44,527 bases of DNA from Octopus bimaculoides (taxonomy: Eukaryota), in contig NC_068986.1 of the NCBI RefSeq assembly GCF_001194135.2, positions 64,518,279-64,562,805 of the forward strand, given 5' to 3'. The notes under the pieces are model-generated. The model was not told the DNA's origin. It did no database searches and worked only from the letters and a program-made list of their open reading frames with translations. Every line of letters begins with the position of its first letter. Position 1 is the stretch's first letter. Below are positions 1,027 to 44,322 of the stretch, piece after piece. Made by a program: the position numbers and the translations under genes.

Positions 1027-1695
1027 AACGGTAACTTGAATAGTGACAGATACATCCAATTCCTGAAGGACAATTTGATACCAGACTTGGATGAAGCTGA
1101 GATTTTTCAGCATGACGTAGCGTACAACACAACAGAGTGTGGCTGATGAAGGTGTTACCATATTAAAAGATTGGCCAGCTCAGATCCCTGACTTAAATAT
1201 CATCGATCAAATGCGGACAGAACTAAAGAGAAGAGTTCGTCAGAAGAATCCACGCAATCTTGAAAAGTTGTGGGATCTCACCCACAGAGAATGGCATCTC
1301 ATACCTGTGAAGATGGTGAGAGATTTGTTTGTATCTCTTCCCAGACGCATTGAAGCAATTATTCAAGCTAAGGGAAGCCACATGAAATATTAACAATGTA
1401 CAGTAACTTCTTGAAATGAACATTATGTAATACATTTTCATTATAGACTTTGTTGAATAGTTTATGTGAGGTGGCCGAAAATTTTTGTGCAGCCAGTTTT
1501 GATGGCTGTCTCGCATCTTTTCCTCTCATTCAGAATCCCTACTACAAAATATAATGATTAGGTATGGAAATGACTCCAACAGGGTCAATGTTCCATCTGT
1601 AAAAGAACGCAATGCGAAACATCCACTTAAAAGTTGGCAATTAGTAGACATTTACAATAGCTTAAAGTGGCTGAAGACTTTTGCACGGAACTGTA
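1027..1695 (+). mobile_element. Tc1-family DNA transposon, 5'-truncated remnant with intact right end (IR/DR-type long TIR)
   Basis: Translates NGNLNSDRYIQFLKDNLIPDLDEAEIFQHD, then after a frameshift WPAQIPDLNII...LPRRIEAIIQAKGSHMKY* (Tc1 DDE C-terminus). Inner repeat GTGGCCGAAAATTTTTGTGCAG at about 1471-1492 and outer GTGGCTGAAGACTTTTGCACGGAACTG ending at 1693, followed by TA. Confidence 0.9.
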
Positions 1696-2462
1696 GTTAT
1701 GTATCTTTTGTTGTTTCACTTTATTCTTCTACGAGATAGTTATAGCTAGACAGATAATGTTTCTGTGTCTAATGATGAGTTTTCATGTTTATGTAATTGT
1801 AAATAAACTGTTCTCATTGTATTATATATTCTTTATATACACCTTTATATATTCTCGTTTAGTATTCCTTTGCAGCTGATATAGCGTGGTAGAAAGATGC
1901 AGAGATGATCTGCAACTTCCACCCAGGTTCGATTCACGAATATAGCTTTCTACTTATTGTGCTGAGAACGATAAATAATTAATAACTTCGTAATTAAGAA
2001 TTGCCCTTTAATTGTACATATAGTATCACAGTTTAAGGAAGAGAAACTTCTCAATTCTAAGTGGAGGGTAGAAATCAAAGTTTTTCATTTGATGCATTGA
2101 TTCTGAGATAAGAAAACCCATTATTACCCTTTCTAATATATGTTTCGAAAAAAACTTAATACTTTGTGATAGATGCTGCAGGTTTACTGAAATAGGAGCA
2201 ATAAGCTTCTGTTCATTTCGTATAAGACAGCCGAGTGAGTTTCTATAGCCAATATATTTGGTTTAACCAGTTACTATCTAGGACTACAGGCTATAAGAAA
2301 GCCTCACCGAATCGGTTATTATTTCAGGATGTTATTATAACCATTTCATAACTATTACCTATAACGTCTTCCGTATGTATTAAATCTGTATTGAATCATT
2401 TCATTGTTATTCAACCATCATCTCGAACTTTTGTTCAAACAACCAATATTAATTCAAAATAA

Positions 2463-2672
2463 AGGAGGCGAGCTGGCAGAATCGTTAGCACGCTGGACGA
2501 AACGCTGGACCCACCGCTACGTTCTGAGTTCAAATTCCTCCGCGGTCGACTTTACTTTTCATCCTTTCGGGGTTGATAAACTAAGTACCAATGAAACACT
2601 GGGGTCGACACGATTGAGTAGCACCCCACCCCAAATGCCAGGCCTTGTACCTACAGTAGAAAGGACTATTAA
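2463..2672 (+). mobile_element. tRNA-derived SINE, family A
   Basis: GGCGAGCTGGCAGAATCGTTAGCA head, GTTCTGAGTTCAAATTCC box-B-like motif and CTTTCATCCTTTCGGGGT core, shared with at least seven other copies in the window. Confidence 0.85.
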
Positions 2673-2929
2673 TTCAAAATACCATTTCACCATTGTCCCT
2701 TGGCCTTCCTTTATAATATGACTCAAATGTCATTGTTAGAATTTTTAATACATTCAGGTTGGTTCAAACTCTTCTAGAGAATTGAATTGGAAAACATGCT
2801 CAGCGAATCAGTGAAGCCAAATAAGAAAACATCCTACTAATATGTAGTCGTAAATTAGGTTTAAATGTCAATCTTATGAACTTTTGCTTTTTTAAACAAC
2901 CGCTGTAACTTGATGGAGGATGTCAAAAC

Positions 2930-3013
2930 ATAGTCGCAGCGAGTCCGGGTTGGGTCACATGACCTTTAAGTTTAAAAGAGGCCCGGCCTGCCTGCACTTA
3001 CCTCATCATAGCT
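2930..3013. promoter_or_regulatory. GC-rich island with palindromic E-box GGTCACATGACC, TATA-like TTTAAAAG and a consensus minus-strand splice donor
   Basis: GGTCACATGACC at 2953-2964, TTTAAAAG at 2971-2978, reverse-strand GAG|gtaagt at 2996-3004. Motif evidence only. Confidence 0.25.
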
Positions 3014-4390
3014 ATATTTAACACATGAATACATATCTATATACTATATATCTATAGATGTATTATGTTTACTACTCCAATGAACTTCAACTATTCTTTG
3101 TGTAGAATTCAATAAACACTTATGTCTGTCTACTAAAACCGATTATATTTTTTGACTAGCAATTCACGGTTCGCAGTTTCAAATCCTCAGCATGCATTTT
3201 TGGTATGGTTCCCGGGTAGTAAATTATATTCTATAAACTTCAGCTTACCAAATAAAATCAATGGCTTAATCTGGAATAGATGGAACCATCTATTCCAGAT
3301 ATAGCAATTAGATTATGTTTAACTAGACATTGAAGGGTGCTTACTGCTACTCAGAGGTAGTTAGTTATAAAACAAGGAATGATTATGATTGAGATAATAG
3401 CAAAGTAGTCCTAAAATTGGATTCAGCGTAAGTCTTCTTTTGTGCTATCTACTTAATTTCACCGTATTTGAAATAGAATATAATCTAAAACCGGAAATTA
3501 GATTTTCTCGTTTCAAATGGAAATTGTTTTAGTCCAACTGTATAAAGTAAAAAATAAATCATTAGATTAAATGATATATAGGAGGTTCATTTGAAATTAT
3601 GCTCGGGCAGATAACAAAGTGATGAGTAATGAGATAGTTCATACAGTATACATCATACATGTCAGGCTTCTTTACAAATATAATGAGTTTCTTATTTCGA
3701 TAATAAATTCAAAAAATCACCGAGGTGGTCTACTTGTGGAAAAATCAAATCTAGGATAAAATACCTTCATTCTTTGATGAACGCATCTACTTGAAATTTC
3801 AGACATTTCACCATCCTATGGTACATCAACATATCTTACTTTATATCTCCATACCCCACGGATTCTTGTTCCATATAGTTTGTATGTATTTAACATAGAA
3901 TTCTACATGCAGTATGTATTACATATAGTCTGTACTGAAATTGCATGAATTCTGTGTAAATTTTGTGTACTTATTTGATGAACTATTGGCTCTTGCAGAC
4001 ATCCTCTTAAATTACTTTTAAATAGCAAATATTTACACATTATTGTTTACTTTCGAAATTGACAAATTATTTTCATTGAAACGTGCATACCATAAGAATT
4101 TAATTCTTAAATATTTCGGTTTTCTAAAGTGCTTAAATGACGATACTTCTGATTCAGTTAAAGATTCGAAATAAGTTTGCTACCTTAAGAAAAATAACAT
4201 AAATATATTATGTTTTTGATAAACATACCATTGTATTACTTCGTGAGCAAAAAACCCAACTGATTCATTCGGTGTCAGCGTGGGATCATACAACTGTGAA
4301 GAGATATGCGATTTTGTTGGTTTGTATTGTATATCCTCGATAGATTAAATTTTAACTCACAACCATAAAAACACGAACACACACATCATA

Positions 4391-4391
4391 A

Positions 4392-4430
<39 letters not shown>

Positions 4431-4540
4431 ATGAGTTGGCTACCAAGATGGCATGTCACATATTAAGCACACACTCGAATGTTCCGGAATGTGTTAAAGA
4501 TAAATGTACATATTATTTTGATCGTTATTGCTTCATGTGC

Positions 4541-4615
<75 letters not shown>

Positions 4616-4790
4616 CACACACACATGCACGCACGCACACACACACACACACGTNNNNNNNNNNNNNNNNNNNNNNNNNNNNNNNNNNNNNNNNNNNNNN
4701 NNNNATATATATATATATATATATATATATGCATATATACACACATACACATATACACGCACACAAATATACATACATATATAAAGGTTA
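4391..4790. repeat. Compound (GA)n, (CA)n, (TA)n microsatellites around a 50-N gap
   Basis: Direct reading. Accounts for the six overlapping ORFs at 4436-4845. Confidence 0.95.
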
Positions 4791-5764
4791 CTGGCACCTC
4801 ATTGTGTCCTTGTTTGAAAGGCTGATATCTCACTAATGCAGTCAAAAGGTTTTAACTGTAGTGATAGAGTTTACTCGCTGCAGCGGAATCCTTGCACAGT
4901 TGACGAGTGCTTCTTTAGTTTGCATTAATAAGATCGACTTCTCATAATGAAGTTTGGAAAGACAGAATGGTGTCCACTTAGCTGATATGCTCTAGATACA
5001 CTTAAGGAGATGAAATATTCAATGGTTATCCTTAATGGGATATGAGAAACTCTTTTCTGTATTATTAGCTTCAAATCGATAAAACAGTCTTAACACATTT
5101 AAACTTCCCTTTGATCGAGGTTTGGTAGTCCTATTAATAATGCAATCACTGGGGTTTTGCTCAAGAAGTAAATATGTGGGACTTCTTATCTTTTTCAAAC
5201 CCAGTTCATTGTAAACTAACAAAGCACAAACACACAACTATGAATTTTCACGCTAAAGCTATTTCCTCTCAAAGCTCTTCTAAGATAAAGTAGGTACTTA
5301 CTTATGAGATTAAATTTCACTGAGGAGGTCTATGAAGGCTCAAAACATGTCCAGAGCTGTCATCATATCCACCAAAGATCAGTCTCGCTCTCAATTGATT
5401 ATTTCCATATTATATTTTTTAATGCGATTTCAATTTGGAATTCTTTGCCTTGTCTTTCTTGTTAAGAATTGCCATCACTACTAATATTTTTGTTTCTCGT
5501 TACATCGATTAAAACCTATTTTTGTATTACTACATTAAGTCATCCACTCGTCACAACTATACAACATGCACTATTCAATGAAAACAAGAAAACTGAATAT
5601 ATATATATATATATCAGTCGTTAGAAAAGTGATCTCACGTGGCTAAGAGTTGTTTTGACTCTTGTCTTTAGCAATGCTTGTGCTGACTAGCACCCTCCAT
5701 CGCTTTAGTGACGACTATACTTGTTGCCTTTTTGTTGTAAATTGCAAATAGCCACCTTAATAAT

Positions 5765-5805
<41 letters not shown>

Positions 5806-6085
5806 GGAAATTAATATATGTTTTACCAAATAGGAAAACTATAATTGATGACAGTAAAATAAAATGTTATTCATGTACATTACTTATTTGATTTAATAGT
5901 CCTATAAAATATCGTAGATATTCATTATTTACATTATTTACATTTGACGGATATTTGACTTCATCTTGTTTGTTGACTTCATCTTGTTTGTTGACTTCAT
6001 CATGTGTCTTGGGGGAAATTTCGAACCTGGGTTTTCATTCCTAAGGTATCTTTCGATGTTATTATTATTATTATTATTATTAATA

Positions 6086-7830
6086 ATAAGCTCTGTGTGC
6101 CTTGGGTATGTGCTGTGGTTTGCTTTGATGCTCTTATGGTTACTGTATTGAAAGTGTTTTGCGTAGGATGTGTGCAGTGACCAGTAGTGCAATTTTCTGT
6201 ATGTTATGTATATTTGTAAGTCCTGGTGTTTTTGTTATGTATTTATCTGAATATTTTTTATCATACCTAATGCGCCTACTATGATAGGAATTGTTTCTGT
6301 TTTTACATTCGTGTTACCTCTATTTCCAGGTCTTTGTATTTTGAAAGTTTTTCCATTTCTTTTAGAGAAACGTTGNNNNNNNNNNTTTATTGTTTCTTGT
6401 CCATCGCCACATATTCTGCAGTTATTTTTTATGTTTCTTTTCATTATATGTTTTTGGTAATTTCTGGTGGGGAGGCTTTGGTCTTGTGCAGCAATTAAAA
6501 ATCCTTCAGTCTCTGCTTTGAGTCATGAGCTTCTCAACCATTTCTGAGATTTTTCTCTGTCTATTTCTTTTGCATTTAGTTTAGCCCAGTATTTACCATG
6601 TAGGGGCTTTTCTTGCCATCGTTTTATCATGGTCCGTTGCTGTTCTAGTTTTAGTTTGGAATTCATTTGTTTGGATTTCGTTCTTCTTCTTCTTCTTCTT
6701 CTTCTTCTTCTCCTTCTTCTTCTTCTTCTTCTTCTCCTTCTTCTTCTTCTTCTTCTTCTTCTTCTTCTTCTTCTTCTTCTTCTTCTTCTCCTCCTCCTCC
6801 TCCTCCTNNNNNNNNNNNNNNNNNNNNNNNNNNNNNNNNNNNNNNNNNNNNNNNNNNNNNNNNNNNNNNNNNNNNNNNNNNNNNNNNNNNNNNNNNNNNN
6901 NNNNNNNNNNNNNNNNNNNNNNNNNNNNNNNNNNNNNNNNNNNNNNNNNNNNNNNNNNNNNNNNNNNNNNNNNNNNNNNNNNNNNNNNNNNNNNNNNNNN
7001 NNNNNNNNNNNNNNNNNNNNNNNNNNNNNNNNNNNNNNNNNNNNNNNNNNNNNNNNNNNNNNNNNNNNNNNNNNNNNNNNNNNNNNNNNNNNNNNNNNNN
7101 NNNNNNNNNNNNNNNNNNNNNNNNNNNNNNNNNNNNNNNNNNNNNNNNNNNNNNNNNNNNNNNNNNNNNNNNNNNNNNNNNNNNNNNNNNNNNNNNNNNN
7201 NNNNNNNNNNNNNNNNNNNNNNNNNNNNNNNNNNNNNNNNNNNNNNNNNNNNNNNNNNNNNNNNNNNNNNNNNNNNNNNNNNNNNGTTATTTGTATTAGT
7301 TTTCCTTGCTTCTGAAGTAGGTATTTTGCAGTCCTATCGTGGTTATTTTATAATAGTTTTCCAGCTGTATAAGGCCTCTACCACCTTCTGTACGTTGTAT
7401 ATATAGCCTTTCTATGTCAGATTTTGGGTGGTGCATCTAAGATCCTGTCATTATTTTTCTTGTTTTGCTGTCTATTTTCGTTAGTTCATTTCATTGGCTT
7501 TATCTAGTGTAATGTTGCTACTCTTAACTAGTTTTCTTCTTTTCAGGGTTGCTTTGGCACATTTTTTCTAATCCAAATTTCATATCTATCACCGACCATA
7601 TTTCTTTCCAAAATTCTTCCACTTCTTCTGCTGTTGGTGAAGCAGTAATGTCTATTTTATTTTTGCTAAGCTCTTGGTAGAATTTTTTGTGGTTGGAGTT
7701 TGTTTTGTTTTGTTCAAAGAAACGTTGGCGTTTTTCATACCGGCGGATCCTTTGTGCTTTGGCAAGGATATCTTGCTTTAGTTTTTCTTTTACCCCAGGT
7801 AAATCTTTTTCTGTAATGTTGTATTTGCAC
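6086..7830 (-). mobile_element. R4/Dong-clade non-LTR retrotransposon (REL endonuclease type), truncated and internally deleted
   Basis: Minus-strand segments LKQDILAKAQRIRRYEKRQRFF, HHPKSDIERLYIQRTEGGRGL, WLRSS*LKAETEGFLIAAQDQSLPTRNY, CRICGDGQETI (zinc knuckle), KEMEKLSKYKDLE, TIPIIVGALGMIK and QKIALLVTAHILRK. Its 3' end abuts a (TAA)n tract. The RT core is absent, and it is interrupted by (CTT)n and two gaps. Confidence 0.85.
6682..6807. repeat. (CTT)n/(CTC)n microsatellite running into a gap
   Basis: Direct reading. Source of the poly-L and poly-S ORFs. Confidence 0.95.
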
Positions 7831-7864
7831 ATACCTTAGGAATGAAAGTTGGAAATTTCCCCAA

Positions 7865-7910
7865 GACACCTGATGAAGGCTGGAGAGTATATCAGCTGAA
7901 ACGTTGTGTT
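7865..7910 (+). ncRNA. Minimal type I hammerhead ribozyme (PLE-type)
   Basis: GACAC-CTGATGA-A-GGCTG(gagagtatat)CAGCT-GAAA-CGTT|GTGTT. Stem I GACAC/GTGTT, stem II closed by a G-U pair, palindromic AACGTT stem III, GUU cleavage triplet. Confidence 0.75.
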
Positions 7911-8079
7911 AGCAACAAACAAAATGAGGACAAATATCCGTCAAATGTAAATAATGTACATAATTCCTCATCTCTTAAATATATAACTGTATCGTAGATA
8001 TTAATGGAATTATATAATACAAGATTTTAGTTGCCTGCAACTCTCATAGGAAACCACGTTGTTGTTATTGATCATATCC

Positions 8080-10275: not shown

Positions 10276-11689
10276 AAGATATGATAGAATATTTATATAT
10301 ATTTATATATATTAAATATATTATAATATAGGTGGCTATAGCATTTATAACCTAAAAGGTAAAATTGATAAATGAAGGTGCAAAATAGCACCTGCAATCG
10401 CTAGAAATGAGAGTCAAAAAATGTAGCTCGAACAGCCACACAAAAGCTCACACACACACGCACACACACACACACACACACGCACACAAACATATATATT
10501 TGTGTGTGTGTGCGTTTGTGGTGGGGATTGCACGTTGAAATATATAAAGTATGCGCGTGTTCGGTTGTTCATAAGTTTGCATCTACGAACATACGCATAC
10601 ATAAGTATCTAAACACAGTTTCAGACGTGTATTCATATATATATATATATATATAAAGGACACAGGTTTCGTGTGTCACATAGCTAGCTAGAGGCGATGG
10701 CTTCTTGGAGCTAATTCACGGCAGCTTTCGTCCTAATTTTGGGACTGCCATGTTGGCTTGGCGATAACTATTAATTTCCAGTACCGCTGCCGTAGTCTCC
10801 TTTAGAGAGACTTAGAAATATTAATANNNNNNNNNNNNNNNNNNNNNNNNNNNNNNNNNNNNNNNNNNNNNNNNNNNNNNNNNNNNNNNNNNNNNNNNNN
10901 NNNNNNNNNNNNNNNNNNNNNNNNNNNNNNNNNNNNNNNNNNNNNNNNNNNNNNNNNNNNNNNNNNNNNNNNNNNNNNNNNNNNNNNNNNNNNNNNNNNN
11001 NNNNNNNNNNNNNNNNNNNNNNNNNNNNNNNNNNNNNNNNNNNNNNNNNNNNNNNNNNNNNNNNNNNNNNNNNNNNNNNNNNNNNNNNNNNNNNNNNNNN
11101 NNNNNNNNNNNNNNNNNNNNNNNNNNNNNNNNNNNNNNNNNNNNNATATATATATATATATATATAATCTGAAACCATTTCGTGCCTAGCGGAAAAAATG
11201 TGTGTTCCTCAAATATATTCCTCTGAATCTAATGTTAGCTGTAGTTATAGCTCGCCGACGATTTTTTTTTATTTGCCAACGAAGACAAAGGCTTATTAGG
11301 ATGCTTATGAATAACTAATGCTTTAGAAATCCTTAGCAATGTTTCATAAACTGTTAAATCATATATTTTATTATATTCTCCTTCTCCTCTCACGTAAAGT
11401 AGATCAGTGTAGATAAACTGAAACACAGCTTTCATAAGATTTTATGGTGATTCTTTTCTTCTCTCAAGAGAGTGTTGTTTTTTCTTTTTCGCTTTTCTAC
11501 ATTTCTTTTTATAATTTTGTTCGCATCAATACTACCGCAATCCAACAACCGACTATGACAGATACATTCCTCAAGACGCTGGAAAACGCCCTTCTTGCGG
11601 ACCCATCAGAAGGCAATGTCCAGCCTCTCTCAGGGACATCATTCATAGCACTGCATTGTGGGCCTTTGGAAGGAGGAGGTAAATGACAC

Positions 11690-13702: not shown

Positions 13703-13802
13703 GACACATACACACAAAATCACACGCGTGCGCGCACACACACAAATATTCATTTACATTATTTACATTTGACAGATATTTGTTCTCATCTTGTTTGTTT
13801 TT

Positions 13803-13848
13803 AACACAACGTTTCGGCTGATATACCCTCCAGCCTTCATCAGGTGTC
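13803..13848 (-). ncRNA. Minimal type I hammerhead ribozyme (PLE-type), intact core
   Basis: Reverse complement GACAC-CTGATGA-A-GGCTG(gagggtatat)CAGCC-GAAA-CGTT|GTGTT with a fully Watson-Crick 5-bp stem II. Confidence 0.82.
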
Positions 13849-13898
13849 TTGGGGAAATCTCGAACCTGGGTTCTCATTCCTAAGGTGTTTTTCGATGT

Positions 13899-13937
<39 letters not shown>

Positions 13938-13955
13938 TATTATTATTATTATAAT

Positions 13956-14012
<57 letters not shown>

Positions 14013-14050
14013 TATTATTATTATAATTATAATAATAATAATAATAATAA
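13899..14050. repeat. (AAT)n/(ATT)n microsatellite with a duplicated interruption
   Basis: Direct reading. The interruption ATTATTATTATAATTATAAT occurs twice. Source of the poly-I ORFs. Confidence 0.95.
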
Positions 14051-14099
14051 CTTCGAAAAATACCTTAGGAATGAGAACCCAGATTCGAAATTTCCCCAA

Positions 14100-14145
14100 A
14101 ACACCTGATGAAGGCTGGAGGGTATATCAGTCGAAACGTTGTGTT
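14100..14145 (+). ncRNA. Minimal type I hammerhead ribozyme (PLE-type), intact core
   Basis: AACAC-CTGATGA(14105-14111)-A-GGCTG(gagggtatat)CAGTC-GAAA(14133-14136)-CGTT|GTGTT. Predicted cleavage after 14140. Confidence 0.82.
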
Positions 14146-14486
14146 AACAACAAACATGATGAGAACAAACAACCGTCAAATGTAAATAATGTAAACGATA
14201 TACATAATTTCTCATCTCTTAAATATAGAACTGTAAATATTATTTTGGTCGACTCAATCCAAAACAAGAAATCAAACTAGTACTCTGATTATAACGATAA
14301 TAGCACTGAGAAGATGCTACGATTCTCACTGAGCTCTCGCTTTTTATTCAATCACATCTCGTGGCACTATGTTGTTGTACAGGCACACACAAAAAAACAC
14401 AACACAGTTAAATATAATGTAAAATCATATTTACCGTTCAGTCCTCGTTTGACCATCACTGAAATGAAATAAAAAAATCAATTTAG

Positions 14487-14527
<41 letters not shown>

Positions 14528-14851
14528 NNNNNNNNNNNNNNNNNNNNNNNNNNNNNNNNNNNNNNNNNNNNNNNNNNNNNNNNNNNNNNNNNNNNNNNNN
14601 NNNNNNNNNNNNNNNNNNNNNNNNNNNNNNNNNNNNNNNNNNNNNNNNNNNNNNNNNNNNNNNNNNNNNNNNNNNNNNNNNNNNNNNNNNNNNNNNNNNN
14701 NNNNNNNNNNNNNNNNNNNNNNNNNNNNNNNNNNNNNNNNNTATATATATATATATGTTTCATATCATTTCAACCTGTTTATACACATGTAATTTAAGGA
14801 CAACTATTAATGTTGTCTGTTATTTACTGTCTGCTATGAATTAATCATATC

Positions 14852-16504: not shown

Positions 16505-17480
16505 TGCAGGGTGGGTCAGTTTTTGTTGAAGACACCACCTTCAAGAGCTCTAACTTTCTTCTATCTTCATTTTTTTAACCTTACTTTTCAAATATATAAT
16601 CTGAGATTGATTCGGCAAACGAAAAGCTGTAATCGTTGCCTTAAAGCGTAGCTTAGCGATACAGAGATAATTCGATTCCTGAAAGTTGCCCGATCCTTTG
16701 TTGTCAAAGTTCGAAAGGAGCTGGAAGCTGCTGATGGGGAGCCAACATCAGCAGCTAAACGTAAAACGCATGCACAAGTCCTCATACCATCAAAACTCAT
16801 AACTTTGTACAAAATGTTCCGGAAAAAGAAATCGATAAAAATCCGATAAGTCTATCAAAACCATTGCAAAAGACCGCAAGGTTTGGGAATGCACCATCAG
16901 AAGAATTGTGTAACAGTCATACATGCTAAGTTCCAAGCAATTGTGATGGTTCGGTGAATCATTAACAATGAGGTAGGTTTGTGAACTTTTTAACAAAGCT
17001 TAAGAGTTAATACTGCTGTCTACACAGAGGTGTTGGAAAAAGTTGTGAGGCACTGGATAGACAGAGTACGTAACGGAACACACTATATTTTCCAACAAGA
17101 CACTGCGCCGTCTCATGAGGATAGGACAACCCTAGCGTGGATGCGTGCCTATATCTGTGATCATGTTCTCCTAGACACAAAGCCTCCTAGCTCATCAGAC
17201 CTCAATCCACTGGATTATTACGTACGGGACTTAGCTGAGGGAGAGAGAGGTCAATCAACATCCTCATAGCACCATAGACTCTCTCAAGTCCGCCATACTC
17301 AGCACTATGTCCAAAATTGTTAAAGATTACCTGATTGAGGTATGTCAACACTTTCGACCCCACATTAAAGCAGCCATTGATGCTAATGGTAGATTCATTA
17401 AATATGTGTAATAAAAGGATTTTCAAGATTATTTGTACTAATTTGTTTTCAAATAGAGCTTTTCTGTGCACAGCTTTTTT
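16505..17480 (+). mobile_element. DD37D (maT-type) Tc1/mariner transposon, decayed with internal deletion
   Basis: N-terminal KAVIVALKA*LSDTEIIRFLKVARSFVVKVRKELEAADG and C-terminal LRVNTAVYTEVLEKVVRHWIDRVRNGTHYIFQQD...PPSSSDLNPLDYY, with 37 residues counted between the last two catalytic Asp. Boundaries approximate. Confidence 0.82.
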
Positions 17481-18629: not shown

Positions 18630-18746
<117 letters not shown>

Positions 18747-18750
18747 CATA

Positions 18751-19200
18751 CAATACCGTGCCAAAGTCTTCGGTCACTTCAAACTATTTTAAATTTCTAC
18801 TAATTGCCAATTTATCAGTGGATGTTTCGCATTGCATTTTTTACAGATGAAACATTGGTCCTGTTGGAGTCATTTCCATACCTAATCATTATATTTTGTA
18901 GTAGGCGTTCTGAAAGAGAGAAAAAGATGCCAGAAGACCACCAAAATTGGCCGTGCAAAAGTTTTCGGCCACCTCACATAAACTAATCAAGCTAAAGTGT
19001 TTTAAAACAAAGAAATGTCTATAATGAAAAATTATTGCATAATGTTCATTTCAAGAAGTTACTGTACATTGTTAATATTTCATGTGGCTTCCCTTAGCTT
19101 GAATAATTGCTTCAATGCGTCTGGAAGAGACGCGTACAGATCCTTCACCATCTTCACAGGTATGAGATGCCATTCTCTGTGGGTGAATTCCTACAACTCT
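18751..19200 (-). mobile_element. Second Tc1 right-end remnant, same family as 1027-1695
   Basis: Reverse complement aligns with about 1280-1695 (HREWHLIPVKMV...AKGSHMKY*, inner and outer repeats). TA at 18749-18750. Confidence 0.9.
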
Positions 19201-19576
19201 TCGTTCGTATTTTGATATGTGCACATAATTCTTCGTATTTGTTTGTATTTGTACAATAGGAGTTGTTTCCCCCTGGTCTATGTATTAATTTGTTTCTTTA
19301 TTTCAAAATTCTGTACAATTTCGTGTGGCTTCGATGTATTCTCATCCAAGATGGTGGCGAGTACCAACGTCCTATGTGGTAGGCTTGATAATTGCTGAGA
19401 ATTCTCGCATGAAACCAATGGTAGCCTTGTTAACCAACAAATAATATATTTCACGTTACTCTGTTCACCAGCAAAGATGAGTTATCCTACGACAGACCAG
19501 CGTCCCATCCAGTGGAGGGGATGATATATACACCATAGAATCCAGGAATGTATATGAATCGGATGTTTTTGAAATA

Positions 19577-20444: not shown

Positions 20445-20776
20445 CTAGAGCAGGTGTGTGCTCAGTGGTTAGAGTATCGGGCTCACAATCATGAGGTAGT
20501 GAGCCCGATTCCTGGACTGGTCTGTGTGTTGTGTTCTTGAGCAAGATACTTTATTTCACATTGCTCAAGTTCACTCAGCTGTAGAAATGAATTGCGATGT
20601 CACTAGTGCCAAGCTGTATTGGCCTTTGCCTTTCCCTTGGACAACATTAGTGACATGGAGAGGGGTATGGATGGGCGACTGCTAATCTTCCATAAACAAT
20701 CTCGCCCTGACTTGTGCCTAGGAGGGTAACTTTATAAGTGCAATTCCATGGTTATTCATGACCCAAATGGGTCTTT
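20445..20776 (+). mobile_element. tRNA-derived SINE, family D, near full length
   Basis: GCTCAGTGGTTAGAGTATCGGGCTCACAATCATGAGGTAGTGAGCCCGATTCC tRNA-like head with GTGTTCTTGAGCAAGA core. Confidence 0.85.
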
Positions 20777-20777
20777 T

Positions 20778-20920
20778 CTGAGTTCAAATTCCGCCGAGGT
20801 CGATTTTGCCTTTCATGCTTTCGGGGTCGATAAATTAAGTAACAGTTGCGTACTGGGGTCGATCTAATCAACTGGCCACCTCCCCCAAAATTTCGGGCCT
20901 TGTGCTTACAGTAGAAAAAA
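20778..20920 (+). mobile_element. SINE family A, 3' portion, directly abutting SINE D
   Basis: GAGTTCAAATTCCGCCGAGGTCG...GGCCTTGTGCTTACAGTAGAAAA. Confidence 0.85.
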
Positions 20921-21271
20921 ATATATATTCATATATACTTCAAAGGAAAGATAATCACTCATTCATGCGCTTGAATAAACACATATATTCACACATCCAT
21001 GTTGAAGGAGCCCTCTCAGTCAGTGCGATTGGCTCAGGTCGAACTCTTGTCGGTTCCCAGCGAAAACCAGTGCACTATACAATAGCTGCCGCGATACAGA
21101 CTAGTTTCTTGCTGCCTTATAGTCATCTCAGGTACCTTGGAGTCAACGGACATAACTGTATAATACCGTACACTTTGATTAATGTATATATGAATGTACG
21201 TATCTACTTACACACAGAGACACACTCACACACACGCACACACACACAATATATATGTAATGTGTGTGTGT

Positions 21272-22402: not shown

Positions 22403-22615
22403 CTGCGAAGTGGTCGAATCGTTAGCACACTGAATAAAATGCTTAGCGGCGTTTTGTTCGCGTTCACGTTCTGAGTACAAATTCAGCCGAGGTCGACTTT
22501 GTATTTCATCCTTTCGGAGTCGATAAAATAAGTACCAGTCAAGTAGTGAGGTCGACTTCCCATCCCCTCAAAAACTCCTTGCTATATACCAGAATTTGAA
22601 ACCATTGTTGTGGCT
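22403..22615 (+). mobile_element. SINE family A
   Basis: GAATCGTTAGCAC...GTTCTGAGTACAAATTCAGCCGAGGTCGACTTTG...GTCGATAAAATAAGTACC. Confidence 0.8.
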
Positions 22616-23880: not shown

Positions 23881-24005
23881 TATCCTATAGTGTATATANN
23901 NNNNNNNNNNNNNNNNNNNNNNNNNNNNNNNNNNNNNNNNNNNNNNNNNNNNNNNNNNNNNNNNNNNNNNNNNNNNNNNNNNNNNNNNNNNNNNNNNNNN
24001 NNNNN

Positions 24006-24041
<36 letters not shown>

Positions 24042-24269
24042 TGTATATATGTGTGTTTATGTGTATGTAATTGTAAACGGGTGGAAACGTTCGTTTGAAC
24101 TTGCAATACTTGCAGTTTCTAGCCTTCCTGACCCATTTCGGTCCGATAAAGATTAAGCGCAAGTCAAGTCTCTGGTTTTTCGGAACCACAAGCAGTCAGT
24201 TGACTCGTTGTTGGGGTGGCCGGGGTATCATACATGGCTGCAGCAATGAAATCTCACCACTTTCATAGT

Positions 24270-27423: not shown

Positions 27424-29111
27424 AATGCACTTTTCCTGTAATTGTCTGATAGTAAAGATACAGGGGCACAGTGGATTGTATCTTTACTATCAGATAATTT
27501 CAGGAAACATTGAACGGAATCTTGCCCTGTACCATTGCTTTGTTGATTTGAGCAAAGCATTTGATAACTGTTAATCGAAATGCTCCGTGGCTAAGGAAAA
27601 TAAGTTGCCCAGAAAAGTTTGTGGACATGATCAGGGCTTTGCATCATGATATGAAAGCTAGAGTTTATCTTGGTGTAGGCTCTCTGAATCTTTTGCCGTG
27701 GAAAATGGGGTAAAGCAAGGAGACTTGACGCATCCACCCCCTTTGCAATGTACTTTTCTGTTGTACTGTCACACGGTTTCCAAAACTCCGAGGAGGGTAT
27801 TTACATAAAATATCGTACAACAGGGAATGTTTTTAATCTGACCTGACTGAAATTCAAAACGAAAGTTTTTACTTTAGTCATTAGGGAACATTTATACCCT
27901 GACAATTGCGATCTGGTCAGTCATTCTGAAACAGGTCTGCAATCTTTTGTATCTGCATTTGACCCAGCTTGTGATGATTTGGGCTTGACCATCAACTTGA
28001 AAAAAAAAACCGTTGTAATGTATCAACCTGCATGTGATGCTGTTTGCAACCCCACTAAAATTTTTGTTAAAGATAAGCTACTTGAGGTTGTTGATTCTTT
28101 CATCTACCTTGGAAGCTCTGTACAAAATTATGAAGATCTGAACACAGAAACACATCTGCGAATTCAAAAGGCAGCATTTGGTGGTTTGGAGTCATGCGTT
28201 TGGCGTGAACGACATATAAATAACAACATAAAATTGGCCCTTTACAAATCATTTGTCTTACCATCCCTGATGTATTCTTCTGAAACATTGGCATGTTATG
28301 AAAGACATTTCAAATTGTTAGAACAATTCCACCAAAATGCCTTCATCGCATTTTAAACATTAAATGGAGTTCTTTTACTCCAAACACAGATGTCCTTGCG
28401 TCTGCAGGTATCACTTCAATTAAAGCAATGATTTTGAAAGACCAAATGAGATTGTGTGGCCATATTGTTCGAATGGTGGATGAACACACACCCAAACAAC
28501 TGATTTATGGTGAGCTTGCAGAGGGGAAGCGCGATCGGTGTAAACCTAAAAAGAGGTTTAAGGACGGCATAAGGACTGCTATGAAATCACTTGGAATGGA
28601 TCCAGAGGAGATAGAAACCCTTATTTCGGATCTAGCTGGATGGCGAACAAAAGTGTGGACTGGAGAGAAAGCGTCTGAAGAGGCTAGGATAAGAGTTAAA
28701 GAAGGGAGATTTAAAGAAGAATGTTACGATCGAGAAGATGAATCACAATGACCTATTTCTGGGTACAGTTTGTGACAGACTATGCCTTTCTTTTCCTGAG
28801 CTCAAATCTCATTTGCGGACCCATGAAAAACGAACCTCCACTAGCTATTCTGCTTATATTTCTGTGCACACTTTTCAATGTCATCTATGTCATAAGGTCT
28901 GAACATCTAACGGAAGCCTCAAAAGACATTTTAAGACCCACAAAGATCAGAACTTAACTGCGGCTCTTGGTGGTCCAAATCAGATATGCAATCTATGCGG
29001 GTGTTTTTTCAAAACATTGTCTGGTTCAAAAAGCCACAACAAACATCATGATGGTTCTAAGCTATAGGTACTGGAGGCGGTCAGACTCTGCATAAGGAAT
29101 AGACAACCTCC
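27424..29111 (+). mobile_element. RTE-clade LINE, 5'-truncated 3' half: RT, RTE C-terminal domain, three C2H2 zinc fingers and 3' UTR, flanked by (TATG)n
   Basis: RGTVDCIFTIR, HCFVDLSKAFD, ENGVKQGD, DFGLTINLKK, FIYLGS, RLCGHIVRMVDEHTPKQLIYGEL..GKR...KPKKRFKD, then C2H2 motifs at 28771-29049. Many stops and frameshifts. Confidence 0.92.
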
Positions 29112-29658
29112 ATGTATGTATGTATGTATGTATGTATGTATGTATGTATGTATGTATGTCATTATTTATTTTTATTGCAAAATTTCTTGCCAATAGAGAA
29201 AGAGCCGATTCCTAACCAAGACCCAAGCCTTCTTCATCAGAATTTCAATGACAACAAGGTATTTTTTCATGTATTTATGCATGTGTGCAGTATTTGGAGT
29301 CAGTGCTTGTGTAGACTTGAATGTTTCATTTTATGTATGTATTGTCATGCATATAGTTGCATGTCTAGACATGCATACATATATTTAAATGATAAACTTC
29401 TGGAAAGTTTTATAGATTTTTACAGTTCCAGTGATGACTTGGATCTATAGTCTTCGAGTCAACTTTCTCCTTTCTGGTTTTGAGTAGCTTAATTTCTCAA
29501 GATTGGTACTTTCTTTCTCGCTGATCTTCAACCTTTATGCTAACAGCTGTTGAGCAGCTGATTTCCACAACTATGTATGTATGTATGTATGTATGTATAT
29601 GTGTGTGTGTGCGAGCGTGCGTGAAAGGATGTATGTTTTGTGTATGTGTGTTTTCATT

Positions 29659-29795
29659 CTGCCGAGGATGACTTTGCCTTTCATCCTTTCGGAGTCGATA
29701 AAATAAGTACCAGTCTAGCACTGGGGTCGATGTAATGGACTTATCCCCTCCCTCGAACATGCTGGCCTTGTGCCAACATTTGAAATCAATATTAT
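29659..29795 (+). mobile_element. SINE family A, 3' portion
   Basis: CTGCCGAGGATGACTTTGCCTTTCATCCTTTCGGAGTCGATAAAATAAGTACC... Confidence 0.8.
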
Positions 29796-30061
29796 TATTC
29801 ATTTTGCTCATTATGTACAAGTACGTATGTTGTCATCGTTATTTTATTTTATTCAGTTTTAGAAAAATCAAAGTTTGTCTTTGACAATTCCAGAGTTGCT
29901 TTAATAGACTAAGCAATTTTCGGTAGTTATGTGCCAACAGTTTTCTCCAACAGGTCTACATAATTGTGAATGGTATTCCTTAAATAACATTTTTCTGTTG
30001 TTAGATCTCTATGTAATGTAGTGTACAAGTGTTGCCGTACATACAACTATACAGTCATTGC

Positions 30062-32382: not shown

Positions 32383-32580
32383 AGGCGGCGAGCTGACAGA
32401 AACGTTAGCACACAGGGCGAAATGTCTTTACGTTCTGAATTCAAATTCCGCCGAGGTCGACTTTGCCTCTCATCCCTTCGGGGTCGATAAAATAAGTACC
32501 AGTTGCGTACTGGGGATTGATCTAATCGACTGGCCCCTCCCCCCAAATTTCGGGCTTTGTGCCTAGAGTAGAAAAGAATA
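32383..32580 (+). mobile_element. SINE family A, full length
   Basis: AAGGCGGCGAGCTGACAGAAACGTTAGCA...GTGCCTAGAGTAGAAAAGAATA. Confidence 0.9.
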
Positions 32581-42839: not shown

Positions 42840-43130
42840 CTTTTAAGGGTTGTAATCGAACGAATCGACCCCAATACACTTTGATTCTTCTTATTTTTTG
42901 TTTGTTTTTGCCTTTCGACTTTCAGGGTCGATAAATTAAGTACCAGTTGAGTACTGGGGTCGAGGTGATCGACTGTCCCCTTCCCCACAAAATCCAGGCT
43001 TTGTGCCTATAATAGAAAGAATTGTTTTAAAGCCTGACACTTACTCTTTGGGTCTATTTTGTCGATCTGCTAAGTACGTAAACAAACCAACAACGGTTGT
43101 CAATCAGCAGTGATGGACAAACATAAAGAC
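42840..43130. mobile_element. Nested SINEs: family A (+, about 42910-43025) inside family B (-)
   Basis: Family B text AATCGAACGAATCGACCCCA stops at about 42890 and resumes at about 43040 (TTTGTCGATCTGCTAAG...CGGTTGTCAA), with a family A 3' half between. Confidence 0.65.
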
Positions 43131-44322
43131 GACCAAGATGCTCTCATGAAATATGGCCAAATGAGGTTTATTTTTCAACAAAGTACCCCATGCGGCCCGC
43201 ACTCTTCTTCCATTGGTATTGCAGTGCTTTGATTCCATTAATGAAGAAGCTTTTACCCTGCTGGTCAAAAAGTCAACAGACATGACGTCATCTTCACTAC
43301 AATACTGGTTCCCAGCCCAGTTTTTTTTTCCGTGTTGGGGAAAGATAATAGTCAGATGGGGCCAAATCAGAAGAATAGGGAATTTGGTCAACCAGTTCAA
43401 AGCCACGGTCACACACAAGAGCCATTCAAAGCGACGACTTATATGCTCGAGTATTATCCTGATGAAATAAGACCACTTTTATCAGTTTTACTGGGCGTTT
43501 GGTCTTGGTAGCCTTTCGTAACAGCTTCTGCAAGTTGGCATAGTACTCTCAATACATTTTGCATTCCATAAAACTGAGGTCATCACCTTCCTGCAGATGA
43601 AACGACCTTGGTCTCTTTTGGAGCAGGTGAGATGGGGTATTTCCACTACATGGATTGTTTCTTTGTCTCTGGCTCGCAGTGATGTACTCAACACTTATCT
43701 TGGGTTAGGAAACGTTCAAGGAAACCGGCTGGATCTGCTTCAAATAATATCAGATCAGCTTGGTGCACTTTTGATCAGATGTCAGAAGACTGGCACTAAA
43801 CGAGCAGTTGCCTCTGTCATGCCAAATTCATTGTGCAAAATATTCTTAACTCTCTCACGAGATATGCTAATAACATTGGCTATTTAACTGGTAGTCAATC
43901 ACCTGCCATGGATCACATTGTGGTGAACACGATCAATGTTTTCTTTGGCGATGGCAGTTACAGGACGATCAGATTTTGGGTCATCTTTACAACTCTACCT
44001 TCCTCACCTAAATTCAGCAGCCTACTTTTGCATTGTTGATAACGCTGGAGCTTCATCTCCTAATGTAGCAGCCTTGCCTGCATGAATGTCTTTGGGGCTT
44101 GGTGGCGAAACCTTTTTTCTGCAGGTACTTGATAACACCACGATACCAAATTTTGTTCATTTTCAAGAGAAGTCGCTACGAGTTAGTTTTAAAGTCTTTG
44201 AACAGTCAGGTGTCAGCTTACCAGGTAAGAAACAATGTAGTTATTAATAACTGTTGAAATTAATGCATGCAAGATTTCACTCCTTCACAGTCAACCTATG
44301 AACTTTTCAGCCTACCCACGTA
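43130..44322 (-). mobile_element. DD34D mariner transposon, near full length, one TIR retained
   Basis: TIR (reverse) TACGTGGGTAGGCTGAAAAGTTCATAGGTTGAC at 44290-44322 ending in TA. The opposite TIR is replaced by SINE B sequence at about 43130. Confidence 0.92.
43168..44160 (-). pseudogene. Mariner transposase pseudogene
   Basis: MNKIWYRGVIKYLQKKG...TARLVP..LTSDQK...FLERFLTQDK...SAGKVMTSVLW...VLFHQDN-(34 aa)-PYSSDLAPSDYY...YFVEK*. Multiple stops and frameshifts. Confidence 0.92.

What the first reader, a model, noticed from the sequence alone, without database searches (positions are those of the whole stretch)
5910..8002. Second independent copy of the fold-back design, bounded by a perfect 13-bp target-site duplication
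Seen: TATCGTAGATATT at 5910-5922 and 7990-8002 brackets a left arm (minus), a TAA tract, 1.7 kb of cargo and a right arm (plus). Both copies in the window start at ATATT|CATT on the left, end at AA(T/G)AACTG on the right, and have a shorter left arm. Inference: the inverted arrangement is the inserted unit, not an assembly artefact. It has a fixed 3' end, a reproducible 5' inversion point and a preference for ATATT-containing targets, consistent with GIY-YIG-type target-primed insertion.
Basis: partly seen in the sequence, partly recalled or inferred. Interest (0 to 1): 0.72.

Follow-up and report, generated by a model that had tools for sequence, protein, structure and literature searches.

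The report
Penelope-type insert with inverted hammerhead arms
This is an old insertion of a small, non-autonomous Penelope-like retroelement: two head-to-head terminal repeats that carry a minimal hammerhead ribozyme, enclosing a dead LINE fragment and flanked by a 13-bp target duplication; the architecture is already described for this class, so it is a clean but ordinary example.

Summary
TATCGTAGATATT occurs exactly twice in the window, at 5910-5922 and 7990-8002, immediately outside two inverted arms (5923-6060 minus, 7831-7989 plus). A second insert (13751-14233) has the same arms, a different 7-8 bp duplication and different flanks. Three of the four arms carry a complete minimal type-I hammerhead with every hallmark published for Penelope-like element (PLE) pseudo-LTRs. 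In both inserts the left arm stops 25-36 nt short of the right arm; this matches the published PLE "tail", explained by two alternative reverse-transcription start sites. Head-to-head arms, short duplications of variable length and cleavage after ATT also match published PLE behaviour, including a protein that cuts and extends both DNA strands. However, no RT or GIY-YIG gene is present, so these are non-autonomous copies, and the "5' inversion point" is really a second 3' end. The 1.7-kb cargo is a decayed, RT-deleted, R2/R4 (Dong)-like LINE with its own (TAA)n tail, either captured by the PLE event or nested later. Both assembly gaps lie inside this LINE; its pieces stay colinear across them, but gap lengths and frame are unknowable here. 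This is a new member of a known kind, of low-to-moderate interest.

The parts
5910..5922 (.). Left copy of the 13-bp target-site duplication TATCGTAGATATT. The top-strand cut lies after ...ATATT.
5923..6060 (-). Left arm (pLTR-like module, minus sense, 138 nt). Its outer end stops at ...GTAAATAATG, so it has no tail, and its hammerhead is destroyed.
   Evidence: alignment of the four arms
5955..6008 (-). 18-bp unit TTGACTTCATCTTGTTTG repeated three times. It replaces helix II to helix I of the hammerhead: a deletion between two GATGA(A/G)G words, followed by a triplication.
6061..6089 (-). TATTAT(TAA)7 tract on the minus strand. It is the 3' tail or target repeat of the LINE fragment and lies directly upstream of the left arm.
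   Evidence: the relatives L001 and L002 end in (TAA)n
6090..7830 (-). Cargo: a decayed R2/R4 (Dong)-like LINE remnant. It has the 3' UTR, C-terminal CCHC/PD..D region, post-RT and pre-RT pieces. About 0.94 kb of RT domain is deleted, and it carries stops and frameshifts.
6376..6385 (.). 10-N assembly gap inside the LINE. The relative has 344 bp where the window has 62 bp.
6680..6807 (.). (TTC)n/(TCC)n microsatellite abutting the large gap.
6808..7285 (.). 478-N assembly gap inside the LINE. The LINE is colinear on both sides, and the relative has about 180 bp here.
7831..7989 (+). Right arm (plus sense, 159 nt). It is 5'-truncated at ATACCTTAGG, has an intact hammerhead and carries the tail.
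7865..7910 (+). Minimal type-I hammerhead: helix I GACAC/GUGUU, core CUGAUGA, an extra A, helix II GGCUGG/UCAGCU, GAA, palindromic ACGU. The predicted cleavage is after U7905.
7965..7989 (+). 25-nt 'tail' present on the right arm only (TCCTCATCTCTTAAATATATAACTG).
7990..8002 (.). Right copy of the 13-bp target-site duplication.
13744..13750 (.). Other insert: left copy of the 7-bp duplication AAATATT.
13751..13899 (-). Other insert: left arm (minus sense, no tail). Its intact hammerhead is at 13803-13848.
13900..14048 (+). Other insert: central (AAT)n tract with two TTATTATTATTAT-AATTAT patches. It carries no cargo.
14049..14233 (+). Other insert: right arm (plus sense). Its hammerhead is at 14100-14145 and its 36-nt tail at 14198-14233.
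14235..14241 (.). Other insert: right copy of AAATATT. Base 14234 (T) is either an extra base or a mismatched eighth TSD position.

Best explanation
Both fold-back units are old insertions of a short, non-autonomous Penelope-like element. In effect each arm is a solo pseudo-LTR module of about 150-190 nt: an (AAT)n-rich 5' side, a minimal hammerhead ribozyme, an A/C-rich spacer, and two alternative 3' termini 25-36 nt apart.

Proposed mechanism:
1. A PLE RT/GIY-YIG protein encoded elsewhere in the genome (inferred, not seen) bound arm RNA.
2. It made a staggered double cut in AT-rich DNA, 13 bp apart here and 7-8 bp apart at the other locus. The top strand was cut after 5'-ATT (seen in the sequence).
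3. Each freed 3'-OH primed reverse transcription of an arm RNA, one from the distal start (leaving the tail) and one from the internal start (no tail). This step is inferred from PMC11167929.
4. The two cDNAs grew towards each other. One stopped early: the right arm here, truncated at ATACC. The other ran on into whatever lay 5' of the arm on its template.
5. They were joined head-to-head, and fill-in of the stagger produced the duplication.

In this copy the longer cDNA carried (TAA)n plus 1.7 kb of a dead Dong-like LINE. The most likely reason is that the template was a co-transcript of a LINE sitting in a (TAA)n tract with an arm downstream of it, or a template switch within (TAA)n. The cargo would then be captured sequence, not the element's own gene. 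No host function is indicated; this is selfish DNA.
For: Independent insertions:
- Exact TSDs lie at alignment-defined arm ends in two loci with unrelated flanks.

Hammerhead:
- A complete minimal hammerhead is present in 3 of 4 arms. The pattern gives 3 matches against 0.26 expected.
- All 33 helix cells pair, and all three variable pairs change only to G-U or A-U.
- The same paper reports dual min-HHRs on opposite strands 100-700 bp apart.

Insert architecture:
- A one-sided extension of 25 and 36 nt matches the published 30-40 bp PLE tail (PMC8557442) and the 31-bp tail of Pen2a_Av, which also has an inverted pLTR and a 9-bp TSD (PMC3846280).
- The PAc protein cuts and extends both strands, prefers 5'-ATT-3', and has two RT start sites that define the tail (PMC11167929).
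- TSD lengths of 13 and 7-8 bp fit the variable TSDs reported for PLEs (0, 8, 9 and 10 bp).
- Unrelated sequence captured between pLTRs and surrounded by TSDs is documented.

Cargo as captured sequence:
- Only the right arm is 5'-truncated, as expected for the 'inverted 5'-truncated copy'.
- The LINE lacks (TAA)n at its 5' side, whereas a 5'-truncated relative inserted by its own machinery has (TAA)n on both sides (L001).
Against: - No RT or GIY-YIG ORF lies between the arms or elsewhere in the 44.5-kb window, so no autonomous partner was seen.
- Rfam hammerhead models give no hit even at E<=10. This is plausible for a motif without helix III, but it is still a negative result.
- Only two inserts and three intact ribozymes are available, with no compensatory double changes.
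- Ribozyme activity is untested.
- No further copies could be retrieved from any collection and no reads were available. The end-point, TSD and target statistics therefore rest on n=2.
- The two arms sit on different contigs of the scaffold.
Confidence: 0.8

Rival explanations
1. The arms have the same PLE-type origin, but the cargo is a later nested event. A fold-back like the one at 13751-14233 was hit in its central (TAA)n tract by a (TAA)n-specific Dong/R4-like LINE. The insertion deleted the rest of the tract and 11 nt of the right arm.
For: - The cargo LINE and its relatives end in (TAA)n, and L001 is flanked by (TAA)n on both sides.
- The RT of relative L002 is closest to R2 proteins.
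- Dong sits in TAA repeats (PMC3774820).
- The cargo-free insert has a 149-bp (AAT)n centre that would be an ideal target.
Against: - No (TAA)n remains at the LINE's 5' junction. The LINE abuts ATACCTTAGG directly, and homology runs to within about 9 nt of it.
- An extra target deletion reaching into the arm must therefore be assumed.
- The truncated right arm is what the PLE model already predicts.
Confidence: 0.3
2. The inversion arose from one template by hairpin self-priming or template switching on a single (possibly antisense) PLE RNA, as proposed for A. vaga. It did not arise from independent priming at both cut strands.
For: - PMC3846280 argues for self-priming from palindromes at inverted junctions.
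- Two alignment columns are shared by the two arms of one insert and none across inserts (pattern xxyy 2, xyxy 0, xyyx 0). This fits one source per insert.
Against: - There is no palindrome at the inner junction of either insert. Instead there is an asymmetric (AAT)n tract in one and 1.7 kb of LINE in the other.
- Both outer ends are bona fide 3' termini at the two known start positions.
- In vitro, the PLE protein extends both strands.
Confidence: 0.15
3. The unit was mobilised by the LINE machinery (R2/R4-type): a LINE read-through transcript carrying a downstream arm (3' transduction), with a twin-priming-type 5' inversion.
For: - The LINE and the left arm are in the same sense and contiguous: LINE-(TAA)n-arm on the minus strand.
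Against: - The cargo-free insert ends at the same two arm positions without any LINE.
- Twin priming would invert upstream LINE sequence, not add a second arm with a different 3' terminus.
- Relatives of this LINE end in, and are flanked by, (TAA)n rather than unique AT-rich DNA with 7-13 bp TSDs.
Confidence: 0.05
4. The unit is a DNA transposon or MITE (fold-back type) with terminal inverted repeats, moved by a transposase.
For: - It has inverted termini and flanking direct duplications.
Against: - The TSD length differs between the two copies (13 vs 7-8 bp).
- The termini are unequal: one arm has a 25-36 nt extension.
- The arms contain a strand-specific hammerhead.
- The inner ends are ragged, with 5'-truncation.
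- The transposase remnants in the window are unrelated Tc1/mariner pieces located elsewhere.
Confidence: 0.03
5. The arrangement is an assembly or scaffolding artefact, or a chance repeat.
For: - Two gaps (488 N) separate the arms, and the arms lie on different contigs.
Against: - The 13-bp match sits exactly at both arm ends (background 4e-5).
- The LINE is colinear and on the same strand across both gaps.
- The arms differ by 16% plus indels, so they are not one sequence assembled twice.
- A second locus without internal gaps shows the same design.
Confidence: 0.02

Closest known systems
Endonuclease-positive Penelope-like elements (e.g. Pen2a_Av of Adineta vaga, PMC3846280; PAc/Poseidon of Anolis, PMC11167929; general structure in PMC8557442)
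   Same: - A head-to-head inverted pLTR completes the insert.
- A 30-40 bp tail is present at one end only.
- TSDs are short and of variable length.
- The target is AT-rich, with the cut after ATT.
- The hammerhead sits in the pLTR a few tens of nucleotides upstream of the RT start sites.
   Different: - There is no RT/GIY-YIG ORF and no direct upstream pLTR.
- The body is either nothing but (AAT)n or a foreign LINE fragment.
- The arms are only 150-190 nt.
- A 13-bp TSD is longer than the 8-10 bp examples read here.
PLE-mediated capture of unrelated sequence (NRPS gene and non-coding sequences between Pen3a pLTRs with an 8-bp TSD, A. vaga; PMC3846280)
   Same: - Foreign DNA lies between pLTR-type repeats.
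- The whole unit is bounded by one TSD.
- The paper invokes AT-rich trinucleotide repeats ((AAT)n) and template jumps.
   Different: - The captured piece here is a decayed site-specific LINE, not a host gene.
- Capture is not proven here: no empty site and no sibling copies were found.
Dispersed minimal hammerheads of metazoan PLEs (Cervera and de la Pena 2014, PMC4209133)
   Same: - The core is CUGAUGA...GAA.
[quoted passage not shown]
- The G10.1-C11.1 pair is present.
- Positions 15.2-16.2 are palindromic with no helix III, which implies dimer-only activity.
- Helix I is 5 bp.
- Dual motifs occur on opposite strands 100-700 bp apart.
   Different: - Helix II here is 6 bp, against 7-8 bp in the Schistosoma families.
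- Activity is untested.
- The host organism is unidentified.
Non-LTR retrozymes (tandem hammerhead repeats; bioRxiv 10.64898/2026.07.22.740005 proposes that they derive from PLE pLTRs)
   Same: - They are short, non-coding, hammerhead-bearing units related to PLE pLTRs and non-autonomous.
   Different: - Retrozymes are head-to-tail tandem arrays giving circular RNAs.
- Here the copies are head-to-head pairs, and no tandem direct copy is present in the window.
L1 twin-priming inversions (from general knowledge: Ostertag and Kazazian 2001)
   Same: - Both 3'-OH ends of a staggered break are used as primers.
- The result is an inverted 5' part inside one TSD.
   Different: - Twin priming copies adjacent parts of one RNA, so the two segments are not repeats of each other.
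- Here both segments are the same 3' module, started at two specific sites.
Dong / R4-clade (TAA)n-specific LINEs (applies to the cargo only; PMC3774820)
   Same: - The cargo and its relatives have a (TAA)n 3' end.
- The relative's RT is closest to R2 proteins.
- A CX2C...H...C knuckle and a PD-X14-D motif lie after the RT (seen by eye).
   Different: - The cargo lacks (TAA)n on its 5' side, has lost its RT domain, and is interrupted by stops.
- Clade assignment was not tested by phylogeny.

Membership tests
Penelope-like element (EN+ PLE) | A single ORF with a telomerase-related RT and a GIY-YIG endonuclease | tested here: not met
   No such ORF lies between the arms. The whole cargo is colinear with an R2-like LINE. 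None was seen among window ORFs or stop-free segments. The copies can therefore only be non-autonomous derivatives.
Penelope-like element (EN+ PLE) | An autonomous partner in the same genome with a matching pLTR, hammerhead and tail | not testable with these tools
Penelope-like element (EN+ PLE) | Pseudo-LTR carrying a hammerhead motif | tested here: met
   the features are compared with PMC4209133.
Penelope-like element (EN+ PLE) | A 30-40 bp 'tail' at only one end of the insertion unit | tested here: met
   Tails of 25 nt (7965-7989) and 36 nt (14198-14233) are on the right arms only. The 25-nt tail is slightly below the quoted range.
Penelope-like element (EN+ PLE) | An adjacent inverted, 5'-truncated copy (head-to-head) inside one TSD | tested here: met
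   Both inserts show this. Here the right arm is truncated at ATACC, and at the other locus the left arm is truncated at AAC.
Penelope-like element (EN+ PLE) | A short TSD of variable length, and an AT-rich target cut after ATT | tested here: met
   The TSDs are 13 bp and 7-8 bp. Both top-strand cuts lie after ATATT. ATATT occurs at 0.004 per base in the window. This rests on n=2 only.
PLE-type minimal hammerhead ribozyme | Conserved core C3-A9 and G12-A14, with an H17 cleavage site | tested here: met
   CUGAUGA ... GAA ... U17 is invariant in the three intact arms.
PLE-type minimal hammerhead ribozyme | [quoted passage not shown] | tested here: met
   The extra A is at alignment column 17. 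The pair is G-C in two arms and G-U in the third. ACGU follows GAA directly. The criteria come from PMC4209133.
PLE-type minimal hammerhead ribozyme | A match to curated Rfam hammerhead models | tested here: not met
   There was no hit at gathering score or at E<=10. The Rfam models include a helix III that this motif lacks.
PLE-type minimal hammerhead ribozyme | Self-cleavage (as a dimer) | not testable with these tools
   Only a cofold was run, and it does not model the catalytic core.
Non-LTR retrozyme | Head-to-tail tandem copies of the hammerhead unit | tested here: not met
   Only four arms are in the window, arranged as two inverted pairs.
TIR DNA transposon / MITE | A fixed TSD length and equivalent terminal inverted repeats | tested here: not met
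   The TSDs are 13 vs 7-8 bp, and the termini are unequal through a one-sided tail.
R2/R4 (Dong)-like LINE (cargo) | An R2-type RT, and (TAA)n at both flanks | tested here: inconclusive
   The RT of relative L002 is closest to R2 proteins (E 3e-17, against 1e-8 for L1). The relatives have (TAA)n ends. The cargo itself has lost its RT and has (TAA)n only at its 3' side. No phylogeny was done.

The most novel reading that the evidence does not exclude
The LINE fragment is not a later intruder but part of the retrotransposed unit. On this reading, PLE machinery picked up a (TAA)n-specific R4/Dong-like LINE, either through a shared (TAA)n microsatellite (co-transcription or a template switch inside the repeat) or as a standing composite 'LINE 3' end + pLTR' non-autonomous family. 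A further possibility is that the dimer-only hammerhead holds two template RNAs together. That would let a dimeric PLE protein prime on both cut strands at once, which would explain why head-to-head pairs are the default product.
Probability: 0.3. Interest if true: 0.5.

Novelty: new member of a known kind. Interest (0 to 1): 0.27.

Why it matters
These are two well-preserved natural products of the peculiar Penelope-like insertion pathway. Each shows two 3' termini one 'tail' apart, both strands used as primers, a cut after ATT, and a staggered break of variable width. All of this matches what was recently measured in vitro for a single lizard element, so the copies add independent genomic support from an unrelated, invertebrate-like genome.

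There is also a practical point. Such head-to-head hammerhead modules break short-read assemblies and are easily mis-annotated as fold-back DNA transposons or artefacts.

The only open question of some interest is whether PLEs capture and spread pieces of a site-specific LINE through a shared microsatellite.

Tried and rejected
Steps that gave nothing:
- Rfam at gathering score and at E<=10 on the arms: no hammerhead hit, only noise.
- Two metagenome scans, one with the hammerhead pattern and one with the conserved arm 23-mer: no matches.
- A protein-word search with the spurious ORF that runs along the arm: nothing.
- An exact look-up of the 102-aa cargo ORF: not on record.
- Pfam on the cargo pieces: only sub-threshold zf-RVT.
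- Pfam on neighbouring ORFs: one weak DDE_3 hit.
- A protein search with the second LINE remnant, run in the hope of naming the organism: only unnamed ENA hits.
- tRNA scan: none.
- A PDB sequence search with the LINE C-terminal domain: noise only.

Ideas rejected:
- That the arm is the LINE's own 3' UTR. The relatives end at (TAA)n with unrelated DNA beyond.
- That left arms and right arms are two separate subfamilies. No shared left/right site patterns were found.
- That the top inverted repeats are real. They are runs of N and (TA)n.

Also, the divergence between the two arms of an insert (9% and 16%) against perfect TSDs is not significant either way (P about 0.1-0.5). It cannot decide between one template RNA and two.
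Full report
**Observation**

The 13-mer TATCGTAGATATT is present exactly twice in the 44.5-kb window, at 5910-5922 and 7990-8002, and not on the other strand. It abuts the outer ends of two inverted arms, whose limits I set independently by aligning all four arm copies in the window.
- Left arm: 5923-6060, minus sense.
- Right arm: 7831-7989, plus sense.
- Between them: a 29-nt tract (6061-6089) that reads TATTAT(TAA)7 on the minus strand, then 1741 nominal bases of cargo (6090-7830), of which 488 are N.

For random position pairs in this microsatellite-rich window, a flank match of at least 13 bp occurs at 4e-5 and of at least 7 bp at 4.5e-4.

The other insert has the same arms: 13751-13899 minus and 14049-14233 plus. 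It has a 149-bp (AAT)n centre and no cargo. Its duplication is a different one, AAATATT (13744-13750 and 14235-14241), with one extra or mismatched base at 14234. Its flanks are unrelated and unique.

Both left junctions read ATATT|CATT. Both left arms are shorter.

**Gaps**

Reads could not be used, so I tested continuity by homology. Translated comparison of the cargo with a fuller relative from an ENA contig (L002) gives a colinear, same-strand map across both gaps:

| Window | L002 | Note |
|---|---|---|
| 7760-7593 | 2977-3146 | |
| 7564-7302 | 4083-4553 | |
| 478-N gap plus (TTC)n | 4553-4733 | about 180 bp in the relative |
| 6619-6436 | 4733-4916 | |
| 10-N gap | 4916-5260 | 344 bp in the relative, 62 bp here |
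| 6374-6161 | 5260-5481 | then (TAA)n in both |

The three contigs therefore belong together, and the TSD supports this independently. About 280 bp is missing or hidden at the small gap. The large gap is probably an unresolved microsatellite. No frame is open on either side, because of stops and frameshifts. The length of 2067 bp is nominal.

**What the arms are**

Three of the four arms contain AACAC-CUGAUGA-A-GGCUGG(N8)UCAGYY-GAA-ACGU-U|GUGUU.
- The fixed-letter part of this pattern has 3 matches in the window against 0.26 expected.
- All 33 helix cells pair. The three variable pairs change only to G-U or A-U, and there are no double compensations (n=3).

This is the minimal type-I hammerhead that Cervera and de la Pena described for the pseudo-LTRs of metazoan Penelope-like elements. 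[quoted passage not shown] They also note dual motifs on opposite strands 100-700 bp apart (PMC4209133).

Rfam's hammerhead models do not detect it, even at E<=10. I take this as a limit of models that include helix III, but it remains a negative result.

The left arm of the present insert has lost the ribozyme. The stretch between two GATGA(A/G)G words is deleted, and an 18-bp unit is triplicated (5955-6008).

**The outer ends**

In their own sense both arms point outward with their 3' ends, so the arrangement is head-to-head.
- The left arms stop at ...GTAAAT(AAT)G.
- The right arms continue for 25 nt (7965-7989) and 36 nt (14198-14233), to ...CTCATCTCTTAAATATAKAACTG.

This is the published PLE 'tail', a 30-40 bp extension often present at only one end of the insertion unit, next to an inverted 5'-truncated copy (PMC8557442). 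Pen2a_Av of Adineta vaga is a direct example, with an inverted pLTR, a 31-bp tail and a 9-bp TSD (PMC3846280).

The tail has since been explained biochemically. The Anolis PLE protein cuts and extends both DNA strands, prefers 5'-ATT-3' in AT-rich DNA, and starts reverse transcription at two adjacent internal sites whose spacing is the tail (PMC11167929).

The variable 5' ends are the inner ones: the right arm here is truncated at ATACC, and the left arm of the other insert at AAC.

**The cargo**

On the minus strand the cargo is a dead non-LTR element.
- It keeps a pre-RT segment, a post-RT segment (HPKSDIERLY..EGGRGL), a CX2C..ETI knuckle, a C-terminal ..IPIIVGALG.. region, a short 3' UTR and (TAA)n.
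- It has stops and frameshifts, and about 0.94 kb of RT is deleted.
- The RT of relative L002 is closest to R2 proteins in the PDB (3e-17, against about 1e-8 for L1 ORF2).
- Both relatives end in (TAA)n.
- The 5'-truncated relative L001 is flanked by (TAA)9 and (AAT)32. This is the behaviour of the R4-lineage element Dong, which sits in TAA repeats (PMC3774820).

The (TAA)n next to the left arm is therefore the LINE's tail or target repeat, and the arm is not part of the LINE.

**How the cargo got there**

Two readings remain.

*Capture (my preference, roughly 0.5-0.55).* The template for the longer cDNA was LINE-(TAA)n-arm RNA. It arose either as a co-transcript from a locus where an arm had landed in the AT-rich repeat behind a Dong-like LINE, or by a template switch inside (TAA)n.
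- This needs no extra event.
- It explains why only the right arm is 5'-truncated.
- It explains why the LINE has no (TAA)n at its 5' side.
- It has precedent: unrelated sequences between pLTRs inside one TSD, with (AAT)n-associated template jumps invoked (PMC3846280).

*Nesting (about 0.3).* A (TAA)n-specific LINE later hit the central tract of a fold-back like the cargo-free insert, deleting the rest of the tract and 11 nt of the arm.

The window alone cannot decide between them.

**Age and templates**

The arms of one insert differ by 9% (the other insert) and by 16% plus indels (this insert). These are old insertions, and a polymorphic empty site is unlikely. Perfect TSDs are compatible with that age (P about 0.1-0.5). 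Site patterns give two columns shared within an insert and none shared across inserts. This is too little to say whether one or two template RNAs were used.

**Rivals**

- *TIR DNA transposon:* excluded by unequal termini, ragged inner ends and different TSD lengths.
- *Mobilisation by the LINE (3' transduction plus twin priming):* fails because the LINE-free insert ends at the same two arm positions.
- *Assembly artefact:* excluded by the TSD, by LINE colinearity across the gaps, and by a second locus with no gap between its arms.
- *Hairpin self-priming on one RNA (PMC3846280):* remains a possible variant of the mechanism, but neither inner junction is palindromic.

**Membership and novelty**

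The defining PLE gene (RT plus GIY-YIG) is absent from the insert and from the window. I therefore file these as non-autonomous, pLTR-only derivatives that work like PLE insertions, not as PLEs proper. All accessory hallmarks that could be tested are met. They are not retrozymes in the strict sense, since there are no tandem direct copies.

The source organism could not be identified. The window is 36% GC and rich in transposable elements and microsatellites.

The design, the tail, the inverted copy, the ATT cut and the capture of foreign DNA are all in the literature. This is a new member of a known kind. Its modest value is as independent genomic corroboration of the two-start-site, two-strand model. 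The one open point is whether PLEs mobilise pieces of a site-specific LINE via a shared microsatellite.

Noticed in passing
window 10927-11166 / 14502-14741, 14492-14640 / 23899-24047, 14513-14756: The longest 'inverted repeats' returned by the repeat finder are runs of N and (TA)n matched to each other. They are artefacts. The assembly gaps at 10827-11145, 14528-14741 and 23899-24005 all sit inside (TA)n microsatellites.
   Followed up: yes
window 27847-28748 (+): A second, unrelated LINE remnant: the C-terminal part of an RT plus the downstream domain. Its homologues carry RVT_1, but it has no Pfam hit itself.
   Followed up: partly
window 1121-1390 (+), 16994-17266 (+), 43107-43478 (-): Tc1/mariner-type transposase remnants, judged by eye. 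The one at 16994-17266 gives a weak DDE_3 hit (E 0.0045, below the cut-off).
   Followed up: partly
window 2519-2676, 20776-20931, 22463-22556, 29656-29802, 32427-32580, 42906-43022: A SINE-like family of about 150 bp with at least six copies at 73-89% identity. ARAGORN finds no tRNA-like head.
   Followed up: no
window 1262-1704 and 18740-19202: A 460-bp inverted pair at 85% identity, 17 kb apart. These are probably two copies of another repeat family in opposite orientation.
   Followed up: no
window 5955-6008: An 18-bp unit repeated three times replaces the hammerhead of the left arm. The breakpoints lie in two GATGA(A/G)G words, which suggests slippage or a template switch between short direct repeats.
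   Followed up: partly
L001 5938-6979: A 0.9-kb, 5'-truncated relative of the cargo LINE sits between (TAA)9 and (AAT)32 in an unrelated ENA contig. This is a clean example of (TAA)n-specific insertion by this LINE group.
   Followed up: partly
L002 1928-2992: The N-terminal ORF of the fuller LINE relative contains long asparagine-rich (AAT/AAC-coded) runs and has no Pfam hit. No AP-endonuclease domain was seen upstream of the RT, consistent with an R2/R4-type element.
   Followed up: no
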